Of a DNA stretch of 64,000 nucleotides, positions 3,001-63,447 are shown piece after piece. Each line of letters starts with the position of its first letter. Position 1 is the stretch's first letter. Both the position numbers and the translations under genes were made by a program. Where the stretch lies: IMG/VR virus record IMGVR_UViG_3300046703_000335, positions 124,001 through 188,000 of that record; one strand, 5' to 3'. The notes beneath the pieces were generated by a model. It did no database searches, was not told the DNA's origin, and worked only from the letters and a program-made list of their open reading frames with translations.

Positions 3001-6000
3001 TACTCTCAATATATCAGAGATACCTGAAGTAGTACCCCCATCAGGCATTGCCAGATAATCCTGATATTTACTATTTTTACGATTAAGGTCACCATTGTCA
3101 AAAGCCCGAGCTATCTTGTCATTATAGCTATATAAATCTCTTACAATGAGCTCCTCAGTCTGCCAAGCTTGCTTTTCAAGAAGCAATCTTTTATAGATAT
3201 TTTCAGGATCATAAAAATTCTCGTATACCTTTTCTTCATTATAACCATAATCACCGATAATGGGTTCTTCTCCGCCATCTGCAAACTTAAAAATCCAATC
3301 TCTATCTTTAGCTCTAATAACTATACCTTGATAGTACCCATCTTTACTCTCTGCATCGTATATATTTTCTAAAGATAAATAAAAATATCTGAAGAACCCC
3401 TTAGAGGTATCTTCCTTTATATCATAGATGATTATCGGAGGTGCTGGTAAAGGCATTGGTATCTTAGCCTTTTCAGTAAAATCATATCTTAAGGCATCCA
3501 GAACATCATCGATATTTCGTTCTTCTTTAAATGTTAACTTTGATAAATCTACGGTGCCAAGTTCTTCCCAATCCTTTTCAGAATCCCTCTTTATCAGAAC
3601 TTTAAAATTTTTTGTGGACTCTTTAATAAAAGGAAATAGCAGCTTTACCAGAGCAGCACTAAAAGGTTTCCTTATCCTACGGGTATTATTTGCAAGTCTT
3701 TCTACAGCATCCCCATAAGCTGTAGCTCCAAGACTCCCATAGTCATCAAACATTGGAAAATCTTCTTTATCCTGACGAGTAATTACAATACGATATCCTT
3801 CTGGAGAAAGAGCATCTACAAAGGTATCAAGAGGAAGTAATCCAAATGTATTGGGGTTTTCTGACGTCTGTACTTGTTTATCAACTATATTATAAGTCTT
3901 TATTCCCTTATCAGAAAAAGGCTTATTAGTAAGAATATATTCATACGTTTTATTATCCGGAGATTCTATACTCGATATAGTATAAGTATTTTTAAAATCT
4001 TCTATAATAACTTTATCCCCTACATTTACTACACGTAAAAATGTATAGTTATTTGGAGTAAAAGATCTATCAGCTATAGGGACATTAACAACATAATCAT
4101 CAACTAATTTATTATTTGTAGCTATTGAGTCATCTTTCCAAATAGTAAAAGATAGGTCAGATGTCCTATTCCAATAAGGTCGCTCAGATTTAATTACTCC
4201 TACAGTTATTATCTTATTCTTATCATTCTTATATGTTACATTACAACAGTATACTTCATTAAAAGATAGAAATCCTTTTTCAAATCTATGATAATAATCT
4301 GGAGCTTGATCACTATACCCTATAGGGAAATATTCTGAAAATCCATTATTAATCTGAGCGATATCTATATCTTTAGTGAGAGTATAATCTTCTGTTTCTA
4401 CATACTGATCCTCTATGCTATAGTAATCGTTTACTTTACCAACTGCATTACTGTGCCCGAACTTAAATCCAAGACCAAGCTGCATCTCAGCACTTAACCC
4501 TCGAAGTCTCTGTTTATACCATTTGAAAAATCTCAAATAAAGTTGTTTCTTAATATATTCATCTTGTAGGAGATAATAAATATCCGCTACACCTCCTCCA
4601 TAATTTGGAGTAGAGTTATTGGTTGCCCCACTATCATTACCTTGACCGCCAACAGCTGCTTTTTGTTCTATGAGCTGTTCTATTTGAGGCACGGTAACTA
4701 TTTCAGAGAAGCTTCTTTCAGTAAGCTTCTGTATATAAAATTGATCTATATTCTGATATTCAAAATAAACGTCCAAACGATACCCTATAGGAAGAGCAGT
4801 TACAAATCGACAAGAACATGTTATTGGGTCACCTTCATTTTCAAATAAATTATCAAGACCCATATAATTAAGGATATATCGATCTAAAGATGCCACAGGA
4901 GTAGTTAATTCTACCACGCCATTAGTAATAGCATAGTCTGTGTTTACTTCTAATCTTCTCTCATTAAGATTCCCAATAGGTATGAAGGAACTAACATCTA
5001 CAGTAGCATATATAGTTTGATTCCCTGAAATACCTTCTCCTAACAATGCAGTGAGATGCGTATAATCCCATTTTCCTAAACCAAATGTATCCTGATTTTT
5101 AAGTATGGTGGTGAAAGGAAAAATAGTGCTTGAAACAACAGAGGATATATTTGGGATAATAGAAGCAGCTAAATCATACAAATCATTTGTATCAGAATAC
5201 TGAATGATAGTTTCTTTTTTTAGCTCATTACCAGAAGGATCAAATAAAAGTTCTTTTATAGAAATATTGTTCGATGTAATATATACATCAAATGTACCTA
5301 TGCATCCAAGGGGAACTTTATAATTAATATCAAAAGCACCAACTGCTAAGGGGATATAACTTGGTAAATTTATGTATTGATCATCAGTACTCTTCAGTGC
5401 GTACTTATCAAAAGCATCATTAAGAATATCAATAAAGTTATTATCTACTGTTATATTAAAAGGCCTATCCCCAGATATATAGGATTCTATTCTCTTGATA
5501 GCCTCAAAAAGCAATCCAAAATTATCGTAATTTGCGTATTTTAGGGAAATCTCCTTAGTATTGAAATTATCAACTACTTCTTTAAAGTATATCTGATCAA
5601 CAGCCACTTTAACCATAGCACTTCCGGTATGCTTATACGGTGCTGTATATGTAAATTGAACTTGAGGTTGTGGTCCAGAAGTAGTTAATACTACTGGGAT
5701 CTTACTGATTTTTACATACCCTGAATAAGTCTGGACTTTTACCCCTGAATCAATTTCAGAATTCAAAAGTAATTCAAAGTTATCTACATTTTGTATTACT
5801 CCCTGAACCTGATATATATAGCTATTACCAATATTCAGGATAGTTCCTACTCTAATGTTATCCTTAAGATCTCCAGAAAATTTTAATCGTGATGTACTAT
5901 GATCTACACCAATAAGGAGACTAACCATATCCAGCCATTCTGGTGAAGTACTTATATATTTATAAGGTGCTACCATATTTTCATTTATAGTACTGTATAA

Positions 6001-56883: not shown

Positions 56884-59466
56884 TTACATAAACTCTTTTA
56901 AGAATCTTCCATGATCAGCAGCAATAGGAGCTACTTTGAAAAGTTCTTCTTTTAGCGAAGCATATTTCTTACCAGCATTAAACAATCGCTTCATCTTAAG
57001 AGTATAATTATTTCCTCGAATCTTCCCATACTCATAGAAGGACAGAGCTTTATTCTGTGCGAGGCATTCTTTAAAATACTCTGACACTATTATAGTAGGA
57101 GTCTCAGCCTGATATTGTGGTATCATCCCACAGGCTTCTATAAACTTATTCCAACTACCATAATAGTGCTCAATAACATGTGAGGGTGCCCCCAAAATTG
57201 ATTTTTCACGATAGGTCTCTCGAGACATCCCTAATTTTAAGCTAACTTCTTTAAACTTATTCTGGATTGTATTCTCGTCAAAAGATACCGAAAAAGCTCT
57301 TTTATTTACTTCATGTGGAGCATCAGTGCACTTTATAATATTATCATAACTGTTTTTTAAGTTAACCCAGTTAATCGAGTCCTTAACATGTCTGGAAAAC
57401 AACAAGATAACTTCATAACTGTCTGAGGTAGTCACATGCTTAAAAGGTATTCTCAACACTTTAAATAACTTATACCCTAAATTACTACATGTGTTTATTG
57501 ATCTTTCAATAAGGGGAACTTTTTGGTTGGGGCTATAACAGACACCGAATACTCCATCCTCCCTCAAGGATTTAATACAACCTTTTACAGTAGCATCCCA
57601 ATACTGAGTCAACCAATCGGAAAGTTCTGGAAATCTATTGATACTTTGAGATTCTTCATTAGAATAGCTTTCATAATCAAAGTATGGTGGTGATGAAAAT
57701 GCTAATCCAAAATAATTCGTGTAAGGGATATCAACTTCAGAGCCCTTATTGTGTACACAATAATTTCCCCCTAAGTTAGCTTTTACAAATGCTCCGAAAT
57801 TTAATAGATTTTCATATGTTATAGTATTAGGCTCAAAACCTACATACTCCATACCTAAAGACATTGCTGCCAGCATCCTTGAACCAAAACCAGCAGAATA
57901 ATCTAATACCTTACCATTTTTACAAAAGTTGGCATATATATACCTAGCTATTGAGGGCTTAAAGTTACTTACAACAGTATTCATTAACTTTAGCCCTTTA
58001 CGCATTGAAGAATCATTTATTCTATCTGCGTACCTCAACCTATTCTCTACTAACTTTTTAAAAAAAGTCTCATCAACCCATACATCTATAGGTGCTGGAT
58101 AACCTTTACGTTTACTGCTATATATATTCGGAAAAAACTTCTCGCATAATTCCATCCCAGAGGTGTTAAAGCTTAAGAGATCGCCATCACATGTTGAAAT
58201 CCCGTTGTCTTTAAAGCTCCTTAACAAATAAAGAGCCCTACTGTCTGATATGTCTGAAAATGGAAAAGGTTTCCCCCAATATTGCTCAAAAGTCATATTA
58301 AACATCCGGGCCTTCATAACATCATTACCTACCCTATAAAATTTAGGATGTACCATTAATGGGGTTAAGGTATTAACCTTATCGGGGATTAAGAACTCTT
58401 CAGGTATCTTATATAGGACATCCGGAGTGGCTACTTGATATACAATATCAAAAAATTCCTTATAAAATTTTTTAGAAAAACTTATCCCACTTTTATAAAG
58501 CTGAAAACCCCACCCCAACTTATTCTCTAAAAAATCAACAAAAGCACTTAGTTGTTCCTTTATAGGGCAATAATTATTAATTATAAGAAATCGAGAATCA
58601 TCATCGTAATAACCATCATCTATAAACCAATAGGCCAATATTCTTTCATCCCAGTACTCTGAAATTAAGTCTATTGGAATTAGCTTACCTTCAACACCCT
58701 CTTTATAAAAAGATTCTCTAAACTTTGAGAAATGTTCACTCTGAATTGTTGCAAAACGTAACCCTGTTCCGTTATCACAGGGGTAGCAATTAGTGGAATA
58801 AGGTTCTAAAAGTTTATGTTTTAAACGAAGGTACTGCTCTTGTTTTAATGAGTGACTCTCATAATATCTTGGAGAAGAATCTATTCCACCATCCCCAAGT
58901 AGACCACCAATAATTAAGACAATCTGATTATGTGTTAAAGGAGGAGACTGCTTCTGTGTTTTTAATAAAATCCCTTTATCTTGTATTATAGGTCTCCAAG
59001 TAGTTTTTGAAACACCATATTTAGAAGAAAATTCTTCTTGTGTTAATTCATAATAATCTTTTTCAAGAACTTCTTTTGGAGTCTGTATGACTCTTTCTTT
59101 TTGTATATCATTAACTTTTATAGATATCCCAAGATTCAATTTCTTCCTTCTATATGCTACACCCTCTCCAGACATCTTAAAAAGTTTGCCAATATTTGAA
59201 TCTGTTTTTCCTTCAGCGTGCAAGGTTCTCAAGATATCATCAGTGAGTTTATTCTTAAGATCTTTTCGTATACCCTCATACACCACAGTAATTTTCGAGT
59301 TATATGCCCCTCTACTATCCGAAGTAATACCATAGGTTTTCATTCGCTTAAAGATTGCATCTTCTGAGACACCAAAAATTCCACCTATAGCTTTTGCAGT
59401 AAAACCAAAATCGCAATATAGCCTTTTTATGGATTCCATATTTAATTCTTCGATAGTATACTGCAT
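56884..59466 (-). CDS. HTH repeats + LAGLIDADG endonuclease + amino-DNA methyltransferase (N4C/N6A) fusion
   Basis: LAGLIDADG motifs IIGGLLGDGG and LAYWFIDDG. MTase motifs VLDYSAGFGSRM and FSSPPYF. C-terminal YYGSWNKFIEACG (homing-endonuclease-associated repeat). Confidence 0.85.
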   Translation of the reverse strand: MQYTIEELNMESIKRLYCDFGFTAKAIGGIFGVSEDAIFKRMKTYGITSDSRGAYNSKITVVYEGIRKDLKNKLTDDILRTLHAEGKTDSNIGKLFKMSGEGVAYRRKKLNLGISIKVNDIQKERVIQTPKEVLEKDYYELTQEEFSSKYGVSKTTWRPIIQDKGILLKTQKQSPPLTHNQIVLIIGGLLGDGGIDSSPRYYESHSLKQEQYLRLKHKLLEPYSTNCYPCDNGTGLRFATIQSEHFSKFRESFYKEGVEGKLIPIDLISEYWDERILAYWFIDDGYYDDDSRFLIINNYCPIKEQLSAFVDFLENKLGWGFQLYKSGISFSKKFYKEFFDIVYQVATPDVLYKIPEEFLIPDKVNTLTPLMVHPKFYRVGNDVMKARMFNMTFEQYWGKPFPFSDISDSRALYLLRSFKDNGISTCDGDLLSFNTSGMELCEKFFPNIYSSKRKGYPAPIDVWVDETFFKKLVENRLRYADRINDSSMRKGLKLMNTVVSNFKPSIARYIYANFCKNGKVLDYSAGFGSRMLAAMSLGMEYVGFEPNTITYENLLNFGAFVKANLGGNYCVHNKGSEVDIPYTNYFGLAFSSPPYFDYESYSNEESQSINRFPELSDWLTQYWDATVKGCIKSLREDGVFGVCYSPNQKVPLIERSINTCSNLGYKLFKVLRIPFKHVTTSDSYEVILLFSRHVKDSINWVNLKNSYDNIIKCTDAPHEVNKRAFSVSFDENTIQNKFKEVSLKLGMSRETYREKSILGAPSHVIEHYYGSWNKFIEACGMIPQYQAETPTIIVSEYFKECLAQNKALSFYEYGKIRGNNYTLKMKRLFNAGKKYASLKEELFKVAPIAADHGRFLKEFM

Positions 59467-59553: not shown

Positions 59554-59586
59554 AAAAAAGGATTGGTAATTTTACTTACCAATCCT
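59554..59586 (-). terminator. Terminator after major capsid gene
   Basis: AGGATTGGTAA/TTACCAATCCT stem plus T-run on the minus strand. Confidence 0.8.
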
Positions 59587-59650: not shown

Positions 59651-61660
59651 TTAGCGAGCTATCTTAACCCTTGTAATTGCCAATGGGTTATGGCACCCAA
59701 TACCTAAATTTTCGAAGACTGAAAATCCTATTCTTCTTGCCTTTGGATCATCAGCAGATAGTACTGTAAGTTCGGTACGTACAGGAATGCGCCCGAAAAA
59801 TTCTGGTTCTGCGCAAACATAAGCATAACCAGGATTAACTTTTCTGCTGACGATGATCTGAGCACCCCAAACGGTACCAAGTAGACCACTCTTAAGCAAT
59901 GTCCCTTGAGTTTCAATATCAAGAACGTCTCTTCCCCATTTTCTTAAATCTGCAAAGTCAAGAGCGTTCATGAAAATACGAGCAACTCGAAGATCATGAG
60001 TCTCAATACGTGCAAAAGCGTCAATCAAGTTTGCAGGTGTAAGAGGAGCAACAGCATTGATCTGTGCGTTTACATATGCACTTCCAAGATTGTCAAAACC
60101 AAACTGAGAAACTGCATCCATAACATCAAAGGCACGTGCATCTTCAGCAGCTTGAATTTGAGCTTTTGCCAAATCCTGTGCGCGTTCGATAAGGTCAAAA
60201 CGACGTTCTTTGATCTGTGTCAAAGGCAGTTCAGGATTCGATGCTATTTCGAAAAGAGGGAATATCACACGGCGAGGTTTTGTGATCGCCAGAATGTTTT
60301 CACCTTCTTCTCCGACAACGAAAGCAGTGACGTTAGGATCTTTGTCGTAAATTGGCAGCGCACCATCAGGGAGCTGTTCTACGAGAAAAGCCTTACGTGC
60401 AACTGACGTATAATCTCTGCGAAGACGCAGAGGCTGGATCCACTTTGTTACTACCCTATTTAAGGGCGTATGAGTCTTTCAACTCATATCTCATGGTTAC
60501 CCATGAGTTCAGACTGTATCACTACCTGTTATATACAGGTACTCGGCATGTCTTGACAAATTACTCTGTCAAGGTAGGTCTTATCGCCATTACCAAAACT
60601 TGGTATTAGGCTTCCCTCAGTCGTTGAACCTTCAATGGGGTTTCCCCCAAAGCTTGGCTGCTGATTGTCCTTTGAACGATATCTCTTAGGTAACTTATAG
60701 ATCAAATCATTAGTAATATTATCACGGATATACTCATAAGCAGTATCTCTTGATTCCTTCAAAACCCTAATATGGCATTCACCATCAGAGTTCTCAGTAA
60801 CACTTACAACCAGGTTTAAAACATCCTTAAAGATATCTATAACCAGTTCTTTGTTGTTTTTGAAAAAGCTATCATAAGACACTATAGTAAACCCGTAATC
60901 ACCAACCGCCCCATCATCCATCCACCAAAAAGACAACCCTACACCAGTAAGTTCACTTAGTAGTTCAGCACTCAGTACCTTTGTACCTTCAGGATAAAAC
61001 TTTTTTCTTAACTCTGTAAATTGATGCAAGGCATAACTCCTTGCATCAACATATGAAAAAAGTTCTCCACCGGATATAAAAGCTCTTTCACCATAAAATA
61101 CTTTAGCAGTAAAAAGGCTTCATTATCTCTGCTTTTCTAAGCAATAGTTGCTCTTGTTTCACACTATGCCTACAAAGCCAATATCCAGTCCCAGATGATT
61201 GTACTGCAATGCAGGAATCCCCAAACAAACTCCCATGCAGAAATTCTTTCTGATAGCTATTTAACGGAACCAATCTTAATGCGTTACGATTCAAATGATA
61301 GCCCTTATTTGTACTAATACCATAGATACTTCTTAAGGTACAAACTACTCTATCAGTTAAACCATATTTTTCACCTATCTCAATATCGCATAAACCAGCA
61401 TTGATGTACTCTTCAACAAGCACATCTTCCGGCAAAACACTTATAAGTCTTGCCAGTTTCTCTTCGCTGATTATTACGTTATTGATCTTCATACCTACCC
61501 ATCGTTCAAAGGATGTTCCAGACAATTTACCGAGTTTTACGTCCACCATCCAGAATCAATTAATGGACGCCGCTAACTTTGCACGGCCAGAAGCAGTCTT
61601 AATGTAATCTCCAATGATCTGTTGTTTCAGTTCATTAGTGATTGTGTTTGTTCCTTCCAT
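59651..61660 (-). CDS. Major capsid protein (HK97 fold), spliced: exon 1 61660-61563 joined to exon 2 60440-59651, 295 aa
   Basis: AGGAGG RBS. Exon 1 MEGTNTITNELKQQIIGDYIKTASGRAKLAAS + AT|G joins in frame to IQPLRLRRDYTSVARKAFLVEQLPDGALPIYD...GEEGE...IGFSVFENLGIGCHNPLAITRVKI. Follows the scaffold and decoration genes. Confidence 0.9.
60441..61562 (-). mobile_element. Group I intron (1122 nt) in the major capsid gene
   Basis: 5' exon ends in U (GTCCAT) pairing with IGS GTGGAC. IGS CTGGAT pairs with 3' exon ATCCAG (P10). P AAATTGTCTGGAA, Q AATCAGCAG, R TTCAACGACT, S GATACAGTCT. P3 ACTCGGT/GCCGAGT. Terminal omega-G. Confidence 0.93.
60529..61492 (-). pseudogene. Intron-encoded LAGLIDADG homing endonuclease with a 1-nt frameshift
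   Basis: LHGSLFGDS lies in 61103..61549 and LSFWWMDDG in 60529..61029. Removing one T from the T5 run at 61111-61115 gives a continuous 320-aa ORF (...MKPFTAKVFYGERAF...ALHQFTELRKKFY...). Confidence 0.8.
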
Positions 61661-61739
61661 TTCACTTCCTCCTAAAAAAATAAGTTTTCTGCGTGTCTAC
61701 TATATCATATTATGGATTATTTTCACGGCTAACGATTAA

Positions 61740-62318
61740 TTAGATCGAAAGCTGAACAACCATAAATGGATCAGTTGCACTTGGAGCAATCAATACGATA
61801 CCAACTACGAAAGCTGCAACATCAACAGCTGTACTAACAGCATTGCTGAGCAAGCCATTCTGAGAAACATAAAGTCTTGCACCAGGAAGATATGTGATAG
61901 GAACTCCGGCACCAGCCTGAGTACATGTCTCATACATATCTGTTGAGAAAACGGTACCTGTTCCATGTAAATATGGGCATTTACCACTTGCTACACCAGA
62001 GCTTGACTCGAAAGGATAACCAACAGCGTTATTAATCGCAACACCAACTGGGCGACCAACAAGAACTGATGGAGCTGCATCTGTACCTGTACATGCTACG
62101 ACTGTTCCGTTCACTGTTCCAACACATACAAACTGACCTGCAAGAATACCCTTAGGTGTGTCAGCACTAAGACGAGAATTCGCCAAAGATTGAACATTTG
62201 CACCGTAGTTATCTCTTGTCAGTCCAGCCGCTGTCAGATTCATGAGAGTATTCATTGTCACGCGATTGAGGATATTTAGGCCTCTATCAGGGGCAATTCC
62301 ACTTCCTTCACCAACCAT
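61740..62318 (-). CDS. Capsid decoration/cement protein
   Basis: Between scaffold and MCP. Beta-tulip-like pattern (ASGKCPYLHG, YLPGARLYVSQNGLL, VVGIVL). Confidence 0.65.
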   Translation of the reverse strand: MVGEGSGIAPDRGLNILNRVTMNTLMNLTAAGLTRDNYGANVQSLANSRLSADTPKGILAGQFVCVGTVNGTVVACTGTDAAPSVLVGRPVGVAINNAVGYPFESSSGVASGKCPYLHGTGTVFSTDMYETCTQAGAGVPITYLPGARLYVSQNGLLSNAVSTAVDVAAFVVGIVLIAPSATDPFMVVQLSI

Positions 62319-62439: not shown

Positions 62440-63447
62440 TTAATTAAAAATTTCTCTTACATCCGGAGCAGTAGACCATAGACTTGATAAGTCACTGGAA
62501 CCACTTGAAGAAGCTTCTTTCTTAACCATACCGGAAAGTTTTGAAGCACCCTTCTTGATAGGAGAAGGCATAACACCACTGAAAATCTGATCAAGAAGAC
62601 TTGCATCTTTTGATGAGCCTTCTTCTTCATCTTCTTCTTTTTTATCCTTGGAGGAAGCTTCGACTTCTTCTTCATCTTCTTCTTTTTTGGCAGAAGCTTC
62701 GACTTCTTCTTCGTCTTTGCCTACTTCTTTTTCAAGCTCTTCAGCTTGCTTTTTCAGGCTGGCAAGTTTTTCTTTTTTCTTTTTAATGTCCAGATCCTTA
62801 GTGCCGGCTTCTTTTTCTTTCTTATCATCTTCGTCTTTGTCGGCAGAGGCATCCTTCTCTTCTTTATCCTTATCATCTTCATCTTTGTCAGCAGAAGCAT
62901 CCTTCTCTTCTTTATCCTTGTCATCTTCATCTTTGTCAGCAGAAGCATCCTTCTCTTCATCTTCTTCATCAGAAGAATCAGAAGCAGCTTTTGCGATCAT
63001 CTGAGCGAGACCTTCTTGGTTTGCAAGAGTCGCATTAAGGCCCTCTTCAGGAAGATGCATAAGAATACCCGCCTGCTTCTCGATAATCTCGTCTGTAGCA
63101 CCAGGAAGCATTCTCTGTGAAGCAATAATAGCTTTGACAGCTTTCTCTTCAAGTCTACGAGCACTTGCGATAGCTTCTTGAGCAGCATGTTTATCAATAA
63201 GAGGAGCATGACCAGTCTCTTCACGTTTCTGATCATCTTTATTTACTTTGTCTTTATTAACGCCTTCATTCCATGCTTCAGGATCACCCTTAGCATATTC
63301 ACCGACACTTGGATTATTCTTGCTGTGTCCAGTATCATTCATATCAAAAACATCATTGTCAATTCCAGAACCCTTATCTTCAACTTGGGCACCTGGTTTT
63401 GACTTCATATCCGAAGCTAATCTGTTAGTCAAACGATTACGAGACAT
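62440..63447 (-). CDS. Capsid scaffolding protein
   Basis: Highly charged, disordered/coiled-coil, upstream of decoration and MCP. Many K-x-A sites. Confidence 0.7.
   Translation of the reverse strand: MSRNRLTNRLASDMKSKPGAQVEDKGSGIDNDVFDMNDTGHSKNNPSVGEYAKGDPEAWNEGVNKDKVNKDDQKREETGHAPLIDKHAAQEAIASARRLEEKAVKAIIASQRMLPGATDEIIEKQAGILMHLPEEGLNATLANQEGLAQMIAKAASDSSDEEDEEKDASADKDEDDKDKEEKDASADKDEDDKDKEEKDASADKDEDDKKEKEAGTKDLDIKKKKEKLASLKKQAEELEKEVGKDEEEVEASAKKEEDEEEVEASSKDKKEEDEEEGSSKDASLLDQIFSGVMPSPIKKGASKLSGMVKKEASSSGSSDLSSLWSTAPDVREIFN
62822..62958. repeat. 48-nt tandem repeat (EEKDASADKDEDDKDK, about 3 copies) in scaffold
   Basis: Near-identical DNA units visible directly. Confidence 0.85.

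What the first reader, a model, noticed from the sequence alone, without database searches (positions are those of the whole stretch)
59651..61660. Major capsid gene interrupted by a fully resolvable group I intron
Seen: splice sites at 61563|61562 and 60441|60440 are fixed by P1/P10 pairing and recreate an ATG codon (AT|G) in a 295-aa capsid ORF. The ORF track shows only a truncated 205-aa piece. Known: phage group I introns are most familiar in DNA-metabolism genes. Inference: the most abundant virion protein depends on splicing, a possible control point for head assembly.
Basis: partly seen in the sequence, partly recalled or inferred. Interest (0 to 1): 0.6.

Follow-up and report, generated by a model that had tools for sequence, protein, structure and literature searches.

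The report
Group I intron in capsid gene
The major capsid gene of this uncultured giant (phage G-like) bacteriophage is split by a mobile self-splicing group I intron whose homing-endonuclease gene is broken; the reading is sound, but this kind of element is already known in phage capsid genes.

Summary
On the minus strand, exon 1 (61660..61563) and exon 2 (60440..59651) flank a 1122-nt insert (61562..60441). Uninterrupted homologues read straight across the predicted joint (…KLAAS-M-xQPLR…); 77 of the 80 closest viral contigs have only an ATG there. Exon 2 matches the solved phage G capsid protein gp27 (PDB 6WKK, E 1.5e-59).

The insert has a complete group I core: P1 with a U·G splice pair, P10, P3-P9.2 and a terminal G. 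P7.1/P7.2 are present and P2 is absent. Ten other viral contigs carry a homologous intron at the same site. Their helices covary strongly: 43 of 63 pairs show double changes, and 0 of 500 shuffles reach that. The P1 and P10 guide sequences track synonymous exon changes. ORF-less orthologues pass Rfam's cut-off (51-62 bits). The window's copy scores 29 bits because about 0.8 kb of ORF sits in the P5 loop.

The intron's LAGLIDADG gene is split by one extra T (61115..61111). This copy also has a unique extra U in P4.

The pattern fits a selfish homing element in decay. Nothing supports a regulatory "control point". It is a new member of a known kind. No RNA evidence could be obtained.

The parts
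61668..61673 (-). Ribosome-binding site AGGAGG, 7 nt upstream of the capsid start codon
   Evidence: Read directly from the sequence. Exon 2 has no comparable site.
61563..61660 (-). Capsid exon 1: 32 codons plus AT of codon 33. Its last six bases (61568..61563, GUCCAU) form the 5' strand of P1.
   Evidence: The exon-1 peptide aligns with the N-termini of uninterrupted homologues.
60441..61562 (-). Group I intron, 1122 nt. It lacks P2 and has P7.1/P7.2 (subgroup IA-like).
   Evidence: Rfam RF00028 partial hit of 29.3 bits, E 3.7e-5. Helices mapped. Covariation. Orthologues pass Rfam's cut-off.
61556..61558 (-). In-frame TGA that stops exon-1 ribosomes three codons into the intron, before the guide sequence. 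A stop at this position is present in all eight site-1 introns examined.
61541..61553 (-). Internal guide sequence: CUGGAU (61553..61548) pairs with exon 2 (P10), and GUGGAC (61546..61541) pairs with exon 1 (P1).
   Evidence: Homologues carry compensating versions: P1 GAGCAU/GUGCUC, and four P10 types.
61501..61535 (-). 5' strands of P3 (61535..61528), P4 (61525..61518) and P5 (61513..61501). P4 carries a copy-specific extra U at 61522.
   Evidence: The extra U is absent from the seven other site-1 introns aligned and from the three site-2/site-3 intron starts read.
61103..61492 (-). Intron ORF, first piece: helix-turn-helix-like N-terminus plus the first LAGLIDADG motif. The start at 61492 is set by homology; the open frame reaches back to the ATG at 61549.
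   Evidence: It aligns with the intact enzymes in L128 and L135.
61111..61115 (-). Run of five T with one T too many compared with the intact homologues. This shifts the endonuclease frame by +1.
   Evidence: The same sequence occurs in an independent Logan assembly.
60529..61119 (-). Intron ORF, second piece: the second LAGLIDADG motif. It reads on through the P5', P4', P6, P7, P7.1, P7.2 and P3' strands and stops in the P8 loop.
   Evidence: Pfam PF03161, E 1.3e-14; PHROG 11023
60441..60680 (-). 3' catalytic domain. P5' 60680..60668; P4' 60664..60658; P6/P6a; P7 60622..60618 with 60516..60512; P7.1; P7.2; P3' 60548..60541; P8 60540..60524; P9 60507..60490; P9.1; P9.2; terminal G at 60441.
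59651..60440 (-). Capsid exon 2: the G of codon 33, then 262 codons and a stop. Bases 60439..60434 form the exon strand of P10.
   Evidence: PHROG 2522, E 5e-47; PDB 6WKK gp27, E 1.5e-59
59559..59586 (-). Intrinsic-terminator-like hairpin with a T run, downstream of the capsid gene

Best explanation
The window comes from a 210-kb fragment of an uncultured jumbo phage related to Bacillus phage G. Its major capsid gene (HK97-type, gp27-like) was invaded, between the second and third base of codon 33, by a mobile group I intron.

Shown:
- The intron RNA can form the complete group I core.
- Its guide sequence pairs with the last six bases of exon 1 (U·G at the cleavage site) and with bases 2-7 of exon 2.
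- Removing 61562..60441 recreates the conserved …KLAAS-M-IQPLR… sequence.

Inferred: splicing follows the standard two-step, guanosine-initiated transesterification. Ribosomes that start at the strong exon-1 site on unspliced RNA stop at a conserved in-frame stop three codons into the intron, so only spliced mRNA yields the 295-aa capsid protein.

The intron entered by homing. It carries, in the P5 loop, a double-motif LAGLIDADG endonuclease gene that is intact in orthologous introns. In this copy a single extra T has disrupted it, so this copy has probably lost its own mobility while still needing to splice. Relatives show the other stages of the homing cycle: an empty site, an intact gene, a swapped gene and a deleted gene.
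For: Gene identity:
- Exon 2 matches PDB 6WKK gp27 (E 1.5e-59) and PHROG 2522 (E 5e-47).
- Phage G, Tunturi_5 and LR745208.1 have uninterrupted homologues.

Exact joint:
- 77 of 80 related contigs are continuous across the site, with only the ATG codon between the exon-1 and exon-2 matches.

Ribozyme:
- Q, R and S core elements are matched by RF00028.
- P1, P10, P3, P4 and P5 are mapped.
- The 3' domain folds with z = -5.33.
- Across seven homologous introns, 63 pairs are 92.9% canonical and 43 show double changes. With the 3' partners slid out of register these figures fall to 36-45% and 8-16, and 0 of 500 column shuffles reach the observed value.
- P1 switches from GUCCAU/GUGGAC to GAGCAU/GUGCUC together with a synonymous Ser codon change. 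P10 has four compensating types.
- ORF-less orthologues at the same site score 62.3, 61.3 and 51.4 bits against a cut-off of 50.

Exon context:
- None of 77 intron-less alleles has the GTCCAT|GATCCAG context that the three intron-bearing alleles using the same GUGGAC/CUGGAU guide share; L059 differs by one base, matched in its guide.

Endonuclease gene:
- PF03161 hits and the frameshift alignment.

Not an assembly artefact:
- An 82.6-kb Logan contig from another run is 100% identical over 3 kb, including the T run and the P4 extra U. A second run carries a 97% identical variant of the intron 3' part plus exon 2.
Against: - There is no RNA-level evidence.
- The window's copy is below Rfam's gathering score (29.3 against 50 bits).
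- This copy alone has an extra U that must bulge from P4, a core helix. Its effect on catalysis is unknown.
- The endonuclease frameshift shows that decay has begun. If that protein also served as a splicing helper, splicing could be impaired.
Confidence: 0.88

Rival explanations
1. The intron is a decaying, splicing-dead remnant: the P4 insertion, or the loss of a helper protein, has inactivated it. The capsid gene would then be a pseudogene in a defective phage population or a dead-end variant.
For: The extra U in P4 is unique to this copy. The endonuclease gene is frameshifted. No RNA evidence is available.
Against: - All other core helices and conserved nucleotides are intact, and P3 is the best-paired among the homologues.
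- The exon frames, the ribosome-binding site and the exon sequence are intact, and exon 2 is 99% identical in protein to that of an intron-less relative.
- The identical sequence sits on large contigs from an independent run and assembly, as expected of a replicating phage.
- A phage cannot propagate without its capsid protein.
Confidence: 0.07
2. The gene is split by a free-standing endonuclease cassette without RNA splicing. The capsid would be made as two polypeptides, or from an internal start in exon 2.
For: Phage genes split by endonuclease genes and expressed as two pieces are known (own knowledge: Aeromonas phage Aeh1 nrdA). The ORF list shows a 205-aa GTG-started piece.
Against: - Exon 2 has no ribosome-binding site, and no start codon at its conserved beginning.
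- The 205-aa piece would lack 57 conserved residues that align with gp27.
- A complete, covarying ribozyme core with guide sequences fitted to both exon ends is present.
Confidence: 0.03
3. The insert is an assembly chimera or another kind of insertion (an intein, a group II intron or an IS element).
For: The source is a metagenomic contig.
Against: - An independent Logan assembly gives identical sequence.
- The exon-1 frame stops three codons into the insert and the frames differ, so it is not an intein.
- There is no group II or other Rfam hit.
- Homologous inserts sit at the identical site in ten other viral contigs.
Confidence: 0.01

Closest known systems
Capsid-gene intron of mycobacteriophage LittleE (Cluster J), and the Tuc2009 capsid intron cited there (PMC3706429)
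   Same: A group I-type intron interrupts the major capsid gene of a tailed phage. Exon 1 ends in U and the intron ends in G. The intron carries a LAGLIDADG-like ORF and is present in only some close relatives. In LittleE, splicing was shown by RT-PCR and N-terminal sequencing.
   Different: The host phage lineage differs (a siphovirus of Mycobacterium against a G-like jumbo phage). The LittleE ORF lies on the opposite strand, whereas here it is on the same strand, inside the P5 loop, and overlaps the 3' core. Here the ORF is frameshifted. No sequence relationship between the two introns was tested.
Subgroup IA2 phage introns (T4 td, nrdB and nrdD/sunY; the three introns of Staphylococcus phage Twort orf142; SPO1 DNA polymerase). 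Compared from own knowledge, plus the reference list of PMC6669764.
   Same: Both have P7.1/P7.2 hairpins between P7 and P3', compact phage-type cores, looped-out endonuclease genes, an early in-frame stop after the 5' splice site, and sporadic distribution. In relatives of this phage (L113, L124/L136) one gene carries two or three such insertions, as in Twort orf142.
   Different: The host gene here is structural, not a nucleotide-metabolism or replication gene. There is no P2. The ORF sits in L5 and reads through the core to L8. Subgroup assignment by dedicated models was not possible with these tools.
Group I introns that fragment essential genes of other huge phages (Jug phages, crAss-like phages; PMC12880540)
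   Same: [quoted passage not shown]
   Different: Jug phages carry about 18 short introns per genome (about 206 nt each), mainly reported in terL, nrdD and the polymerase gene. Here a single intron of this family was found in the 210-kb fragment, and it lies in the capsid gene.
Intron-encoded endonuclease of jumbo phage PhiPA3 (PMC11620839)
   Same: It is an intron with a homing endonuclease in a jumbo phage. That study shows such elements can matter in competition between co-infecting phages.
   Different: In that case the endonuclease is active and gives a competitive advantage. Here the endonuclease gene is broken, so that benefit is unlikely for this copy.

Membership tests
Group I intron (Rfam RF00028) | 5' splice site follows a U that forms a U·G pair with the internal guide sequence (P1) | tested here: met
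   GUCCAU (61568..61563) pairs with GUGGAC (61546..61541), and the last pair is U·G. In relatives the helix covaries as GAGCAU/GUGCUC.
Group I intron (Rfam RF00028) | The intron ends in G, and the 3' exon pairs with the guide sequence (P10) | tested here: met
   G at 60441. CUGGAU (61553..61548) pairs with AUCCAG (60439..60434). Homologues show four compensating P10 variants.
Group I intron (Rfam RF00028) | Conserved catalytic core: P3-P8 with the P/Q/R/S elements and the P3/P7 pseudoknot | tested here: met
   Q, R and S are aligned by the Rfam model. P3, P4 and P5 are mapped. P6, P7, P8 and P9 are recovered by the consensus fold.
Group I intron (Rfam RF00028) | Score at or above the Rfam gathering cut-off (50 bits) | tested here: inconclusive
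   The window copy scores 29.3 bits, E 3.7e-5. About 0.8 kb of ORF in L5 separates the 5' strands from the rest of the model. ORF-less orthologues at the same site score 62.3, 61.3 and 51.4 bits.
Group I intron (Rfam RF00028) | Helices maintained by compensatory change among homologues | tested here: met
   63 pairs are 92.9% canonical and 43 show double changes. Slid-partner controls give 36-45% canonical and 8-16 double changes. None of 500 column shuffles reaches 43 double changes or 92.9% canonical.
Group I intron (Rfam RF00028) | Guanosine-dependent self-splicing, or spliced RNA in vivo | not testable with these tools
No reads were laid.
Subgroup IA group I introns | Extra hairpins P7.1 and P7.2 between P7 and the 3' strand of P3 | tested here: met
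   The consensus fold predicts a branched hairpin and a 10-bp hairpin in that position, both with compensatory changes. No subgroup-specific models were available.
LAGLIDADG homing endonuclease (Pfam PF03161) | Significant match to the family profile | tested here: met
   The second ORF piece gives E 1.3e-14, 54.9 bits against a cut-off of 25. Intact orthologues give E 1.2e-16 and 3e-20, covering profile positions 2 to 154 and 2 to 162 of 168.
LAGLIDADG homing endonuclease (Pfam PF03161) | Both LAGLIDADG motifs in one continuous polypeptide | tested here: not met
   In the window the motifs lie in two frames, separated by one extra T at 61115..61111. They are continuous in L128 (318 aa) and L135 (342 aa). 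The window's gene is therefore filed as a disrupted member.
HK97-type major capsid protein, phage G gp27 group | Sequence homology to a capsid protein whose structure was solved in the virion | tested here: met
   Exon 2 against 6WKK chain A (Gp27 major capsid protein): E 1.5e-59, residues 2-258 aligned to 32-279. PHROG 2522: E 5e-47. Pfam PF05065 is only sub-threshold at 17.9 bits against 24.2.
HK97-type major capsid protein, phage G gp27 group | Full-length collinearity of both exons with uninterrupted family members | tested here: met
   In 77 contigs the exon-1 peptide aligns immediately upstream of the exon-2 match, with only the Met codon between them. Each exon was searched separately by reference; the joined protein was never submitted to a tool.

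The most novel reading that the evidence does not exclude
The intron may be more than a passenger. It has lost its endonuclease yet persists in a replicating population. Its P5 extension pairs with the endonuclease's translation-start region. A conserved stop codon shields the guide sequence from ribosomes. Splicing efficiency could therefore set the timing or yield of the most abundant virion protein. A further possibility is that +1 slippage of tRNA-Phe on the five-U run restores the conserved KPFTAKVFYGE reading and throttles endonuclease production. Neither idea is excluded by the data, and neither is supported beyond the anatomy.
Probability: 0.07. Interest if true: 0.6.

Novelty: new member of a known kind. 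Interest (0 to 1): 0.32.

Why it matters
For annotation, gene callers report this capsid gene as a 205-aa fragment. In relatives with two or three insertions the fragments are smaller still. Capsid-based classification and counting of G-like jumbo phages in metagenomes will therefore miss or truncate such genes unless introns are modelled.

For biology, this set of capsid alleles is a compact natural series for studying the homing cycle and the co-adaptation of intron and exon in an essential, highly expressed structural gene. The series includes:
- an empty site;
- an intron with an intact LAGLIDADG gene;
- an intron with a frameshifted gene;
- an intron with an unrelated endonuclease gene;
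- three deletion derivatives;
- up to three insertion sites in one gene.

It does not change what is known about how group I introns work.

Tried and rejected
- Near-identity DNA search of GenBank phages found nothing.
- Rfam at gathering thresholds over the whole window found nothing. Only the permissive search found the core.
- Co-conversion tracts were sought by comparing the flanks with intron-less and intron-bearing relatives in 50-nt windows. The relatives are too diverged at the DNA level (about 85-90%), so there is no clear tract beyond about 12 nt on each side of the site.
- Other copies of this intron family in the 210-kb record: none, either with RF00028 or with an nhmmer profile of the 3' core.
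- The upstream 192-aa ORF (61740..62318) sits where phage G has its decoration protein gp26, but it shows no detectable sequence similarity to gp26 or to any solved chain.
- An intein, a group II intron and an assembly artefact were considered and rejected (see the rival explanations).
- The joined (spliced) protein was deliberately not built or sent to any search or fold tool. Exons were searched separately by reference, and natural uninterrupted homologues served as the full-length comparison.
- A typed 280-character structure string for the count of structure pairs was avoided. The same counts and controls were computed in a script instead.

Full report
**What is there.** All features lie on the minus strand.
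- A strong ribosome-binding site (AGGAGG, 61673..61668) precedes an ATG at 61660.
- The frame runs for 32 codons and then stops three codons after position 61563.
- About 1.1 kb further on, from 60439, a frame opens without any start signal and runs for 262 codons to a stop at 59651.
- An intrinsic-terminator-like hairpin follows at 59586..59559.

**The gene is a major capsid gene.**
- The exon-2 translation matches PHROG 2522, "major head protein", at E 5e-47.
- It matches the solved phage G capsid protein Gp27 (PDB 6WKK chain A) at E 1.5e-59, with residues 2-258 aligned to 32-279.
- The Pfam Phage_capsid hit is only sub-threshold.
- tblastn finds uninterrupted homologues in Bacillus phage G (gp27), Tunturiibacter phage Tunturi_5 (gp334) and the 485-kb uncultured phage LR745208.1.
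- The window is part of a 210-kb IMG/VR virus record that CheckV estimates to be 45% complete. That is consistent with a G-like jumbo phage.

**The joint is exact.**
- The uninterrupted 291-aa gene of LR745208.1 reads …GRNKLAAS-M-TQPLRTRRDY….
- The window reads …GRAKLAAS + AT | G + IQPLRLRRDY….
- A scan of viral contigs gave at least 596 relatives, of which the 80 best were kept.
- In 77 of these 80, the exon-1 peptide match ends exactly one codon (ATG) before the exon-2 match. One of them, L010, has a capsid protein 99% identical over exon 2.
- The joined protein was never built for, or sent to, any tool.

**The insert is a group I intron.** The insert (61562..60441, 1122 nt) begins after a U and ends in G.
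- Rfam finds nothing at gathering thresholds. A permissive search aligns RF00028 to 60748..60490 at 29.3 bits, E 3.7e-5, matching the conserved Q, R and S elements.
- Reading the sequence with its homologues gives the complete core:
  - P1: GUCCAU with GUGGAC.
  - P10: CUGGAU with AUCCAG of exon 2.
  - No P2.
  - P3: ACUCGGUA with UGCCGAGU.
  - J3/4: AAU.
  - P4, then a 13-bp P5 that closes a loop of about 0.8 kb holding the ORF.
  - P6/P6a with a GAAA loop.
  - P7: GACUG with CAGUC.
  - Two extra hairpins (P7.1, P7.2) before the 3' strand of P3, the mark of subgroup IA.
  - P8, P9, P9.1 and P9.2.
- The 245-nt 3' domain folds at -77.5 kcal/mol against -54.4 ± 4.3 for shuffles, z = -5.33.

**Homologues and covariation.** Introns homologous to this one sit at the identical site in other viral contigs.

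| Locus | Intron length | ORF state |
|---|---|---|
| L006 | 1045 nt | unrelated endonuclease gene |
| L011 | 347 nt | ORF-less |
| L059 | 406 nt | ORF remnant |
| L128 | 1127 nt | intact LAGLIDADG, 318 aa |
| L135 and L113 | 1121 nt | intact LAGLIDADG, 342 aa |
| L124, L136, L131 | 374 nt (measured in L124) | ORF-less |
| L143 | partial locus | not assessed |

Contig L005 starts exactly at the terminal G of such an intron.
- A consensus fold of seven 3' domains predicts 68 pairs, 43 of them with compensatory double changes.
- Recomputed with controls, 63 pairs are 92.9% canonical. The figure is 36-45% when the 3' partners are slid by 1-3 columns. None of 500 column shuffles reaches 43 double-change pairs (mean 19.8, maximum 30).
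- The guide sequence tracks the exons. Where the Ser codon before the site is AGC instead of TCC, the guide reads GUGCUC instead of GUGGAC. P10 occurs in four mutually compensating versions.
- None of the 77 intron-less alleles has the GTCCAT|GATCCAG context that the three intron-bearing alleles using the same GUGGAC/CUGGAU guide share; L059 differs by one base, matched in its guide.
- The three ORF-less orthologues pass Rfam's gathering score at 62.3, 61.3 and 51.4 bits. The window's low score is therefore explained by the ORF that separates the 5' strands from the rest of the model.
- All eight site-1 introns examined have an in-frame stop three codons after the 5' splice site, upstream of the guide sequence.

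**The intron ORF.**
- By homology the ORF starts at 61492 (MKINNVIISEEKL…). The open frame extends back to an ATG at 61549, inside the guide sequence.
- It encodes a helix-turn-helix-like N-terminus and a double-motif LAGLIDADG endonuclease.
- In L128 and L135 this is a single ORF covering Pfam PF03161 positions 2 to 154 and 2 to 162 of 168.
- In the window it is split into 61492..61103 and 61119..60529. Alignment shows one extra T in the run 61115..61111.
- The second piece still matches PF03161 at E 1.3e-14.
- The ORF reads on through P5', P4', P6, P7, P7.1, P7.2 and P3' and stops in the P8 loop.
- An 82.6-kb Logan contig from a different run and assembler is 100% identical over 3 kb, including the T run. 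The frameshift is therefore not an artefact of one assembly. A second run carries a 97% identical variant of the intron 3' part plus exon 2.

**A second copy-specific change.** The 5' strand of P4 reads UUGUCUGG in the window, where the seven other site-1 introns aligned and the three site-2/site-3 intron starts read have UUGCUGG. The extra U at 61522 must bulge from a core helix. Its effect is unknown, and it is the main reason for keeping some probability on a splicing-impaired intron.

**How it most likely works.**
- Shown: the anatomy, the exact restoration of the conserved coding sequence, the evolutionary maintenance of the RNA structure, and the patchy presence of the intron.
- Inferred: standard guanosine-initiated self-splicing of the late transcript; termination of exon-1 ribosomes on unspliced RNA at 61558..61556; translation of the 295-aa capsid protein only from spliced mRNA.
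- Inferred: the intron arrived by endonuclease-mediated homing, followed by decay of the endonuclease gene.
- The related alleles display every stage of the homing cycle:
  - an empty site;
  - an intact gene (L128, L135);
  - a frameshifted gene (the window);
  - a gene replaced by an unrelated homing nuclease (L006; PHROG 559 and 9084);
  - deletion derivatives (L011, L059, L124).
- This pattern argues for a selfish element and gives no support to a regulatory "control point". In this genome, however, capsid production trivially depends on splicing.

**Comparison with what is known.**
- Spliced introns in phage capsid genes are published. LittleE has a LAGLIDADG-like ORF, and splicing was confirmed by RT-PCR and N-terminal sequencing. 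A Tuc2009 capsid intron is cited in the same paper (PMC3706429).
- Group I introns fragmenting essential genes are common in other huge phages (PMC12880540).
- An intron endonuclease of a jumbo phage has been shown to act in phage competition (PMC11620839).
- The core architecture resembles the subgroup IA2 phage introns (own knowledge).
- No report of introns in phage G-type capsid genes turned up in the searches I made. A preprint on the phage G genome does not contain the word "intron". That is not proof of absence.

**Verdict.** It is a new member of a known kind. The regulatory inference is unsupported.

Noticed in passing
window 56884..59466 (-): The 860-aa ORF directly downstream of the capsid gene combines repeated helix-turn-helix segments, a LAGLIDADG domain (PF03161, E 3e-15) and a weak DNA-methyltransferase-like region (PF01555, sub-threshold; PHROG 498 and 12517). 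Its LAGLIDADG part is a distant paralogue of the intron enzyme (24% identity over 289 aa, E 5e-15). A 1229-aa counterpart sits in the same position in LR745208.1, which has no capsid intron. A free-standing nuclease fused to a methylase is unusual and was not explained.
   Followed up: partly
L113:1800-4015; L124:485-3400; L136:4170-7085: In more distant relatives the same capsid gene carries two (L113) or three (L124, L136) insertions, near codons 33, 46/47 and 116/117. Each starts with a related guide/P3/P4 segment and has a related core. The exact splice site of the second insertion in L124 could not be made to follow a U and was left unresolved.
   Followed up: partly
L006:2955-3999 (ORF at 3025-3930): The orthologous intron at the same capsid site carries a 301-aa ORF rich in Cys pairs instead of a LAGLIDADG gene. 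It matches PHROG 559, 9084 and 7140 (homing or intron-encoded nucleases) and has no Pfam domain. This is an endonuclease-gene swap inside a conserved ribozyme.
   Followed up: partly
window 61522 (-): An extra U in the 5' strand of P4 is unique to this copy among all homologous introns compared. It is also present in the independent Logan contig L145. Its effect on splicing is unknown.
   Followed up: partly
window 60529..60680 (-): The endonuclease ORF continues for about 50 codons through the ribozyme's P5' to P8 strands and stops in the P8 loop. The same frame stays open through the core in all homologues, even the ORF-less ones (the …DNQQPS…EGSTT… stretch), presumably because of RNA constraint.
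   Followed up: partly
window 62440..63447 (-): A 335-aa, very acidic Lys/Glu/Asp-rich protein has a 48-nt unit repeated 2.9 times (62821..62958) and a 39-nt unit repeated 2.4 times. It has no family hit. Its position upstream of the head genes suggests a scaffold or internal head protein.
   Followed up: no
window 61740..62318 (-): A 192-aa ORF occupies the position of phage G's decoration protein gp26, immediately upstream of the capsid gene. It has no detectable similarity to gp26, to any solved chain, or to Pfam or PHROG families.
   Followed up: partly
L001:1-650 (Bacillus phage G, gene 23): The phage G endolysin gene is annotated as a CDS joined from two pieces. The reference G genome is thus itself annotated with at least one interrupted gene, although its capsid gene is continuous.
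   Followed up: no
L005:1-3: A 4.4-kb viral contig begins exactly at the intron's terminal G followed by exon 2 in the intron-type context GATCCAGCC. This suggests an assembly break at an intron that is polymorphic in that population.
   Followed up: no
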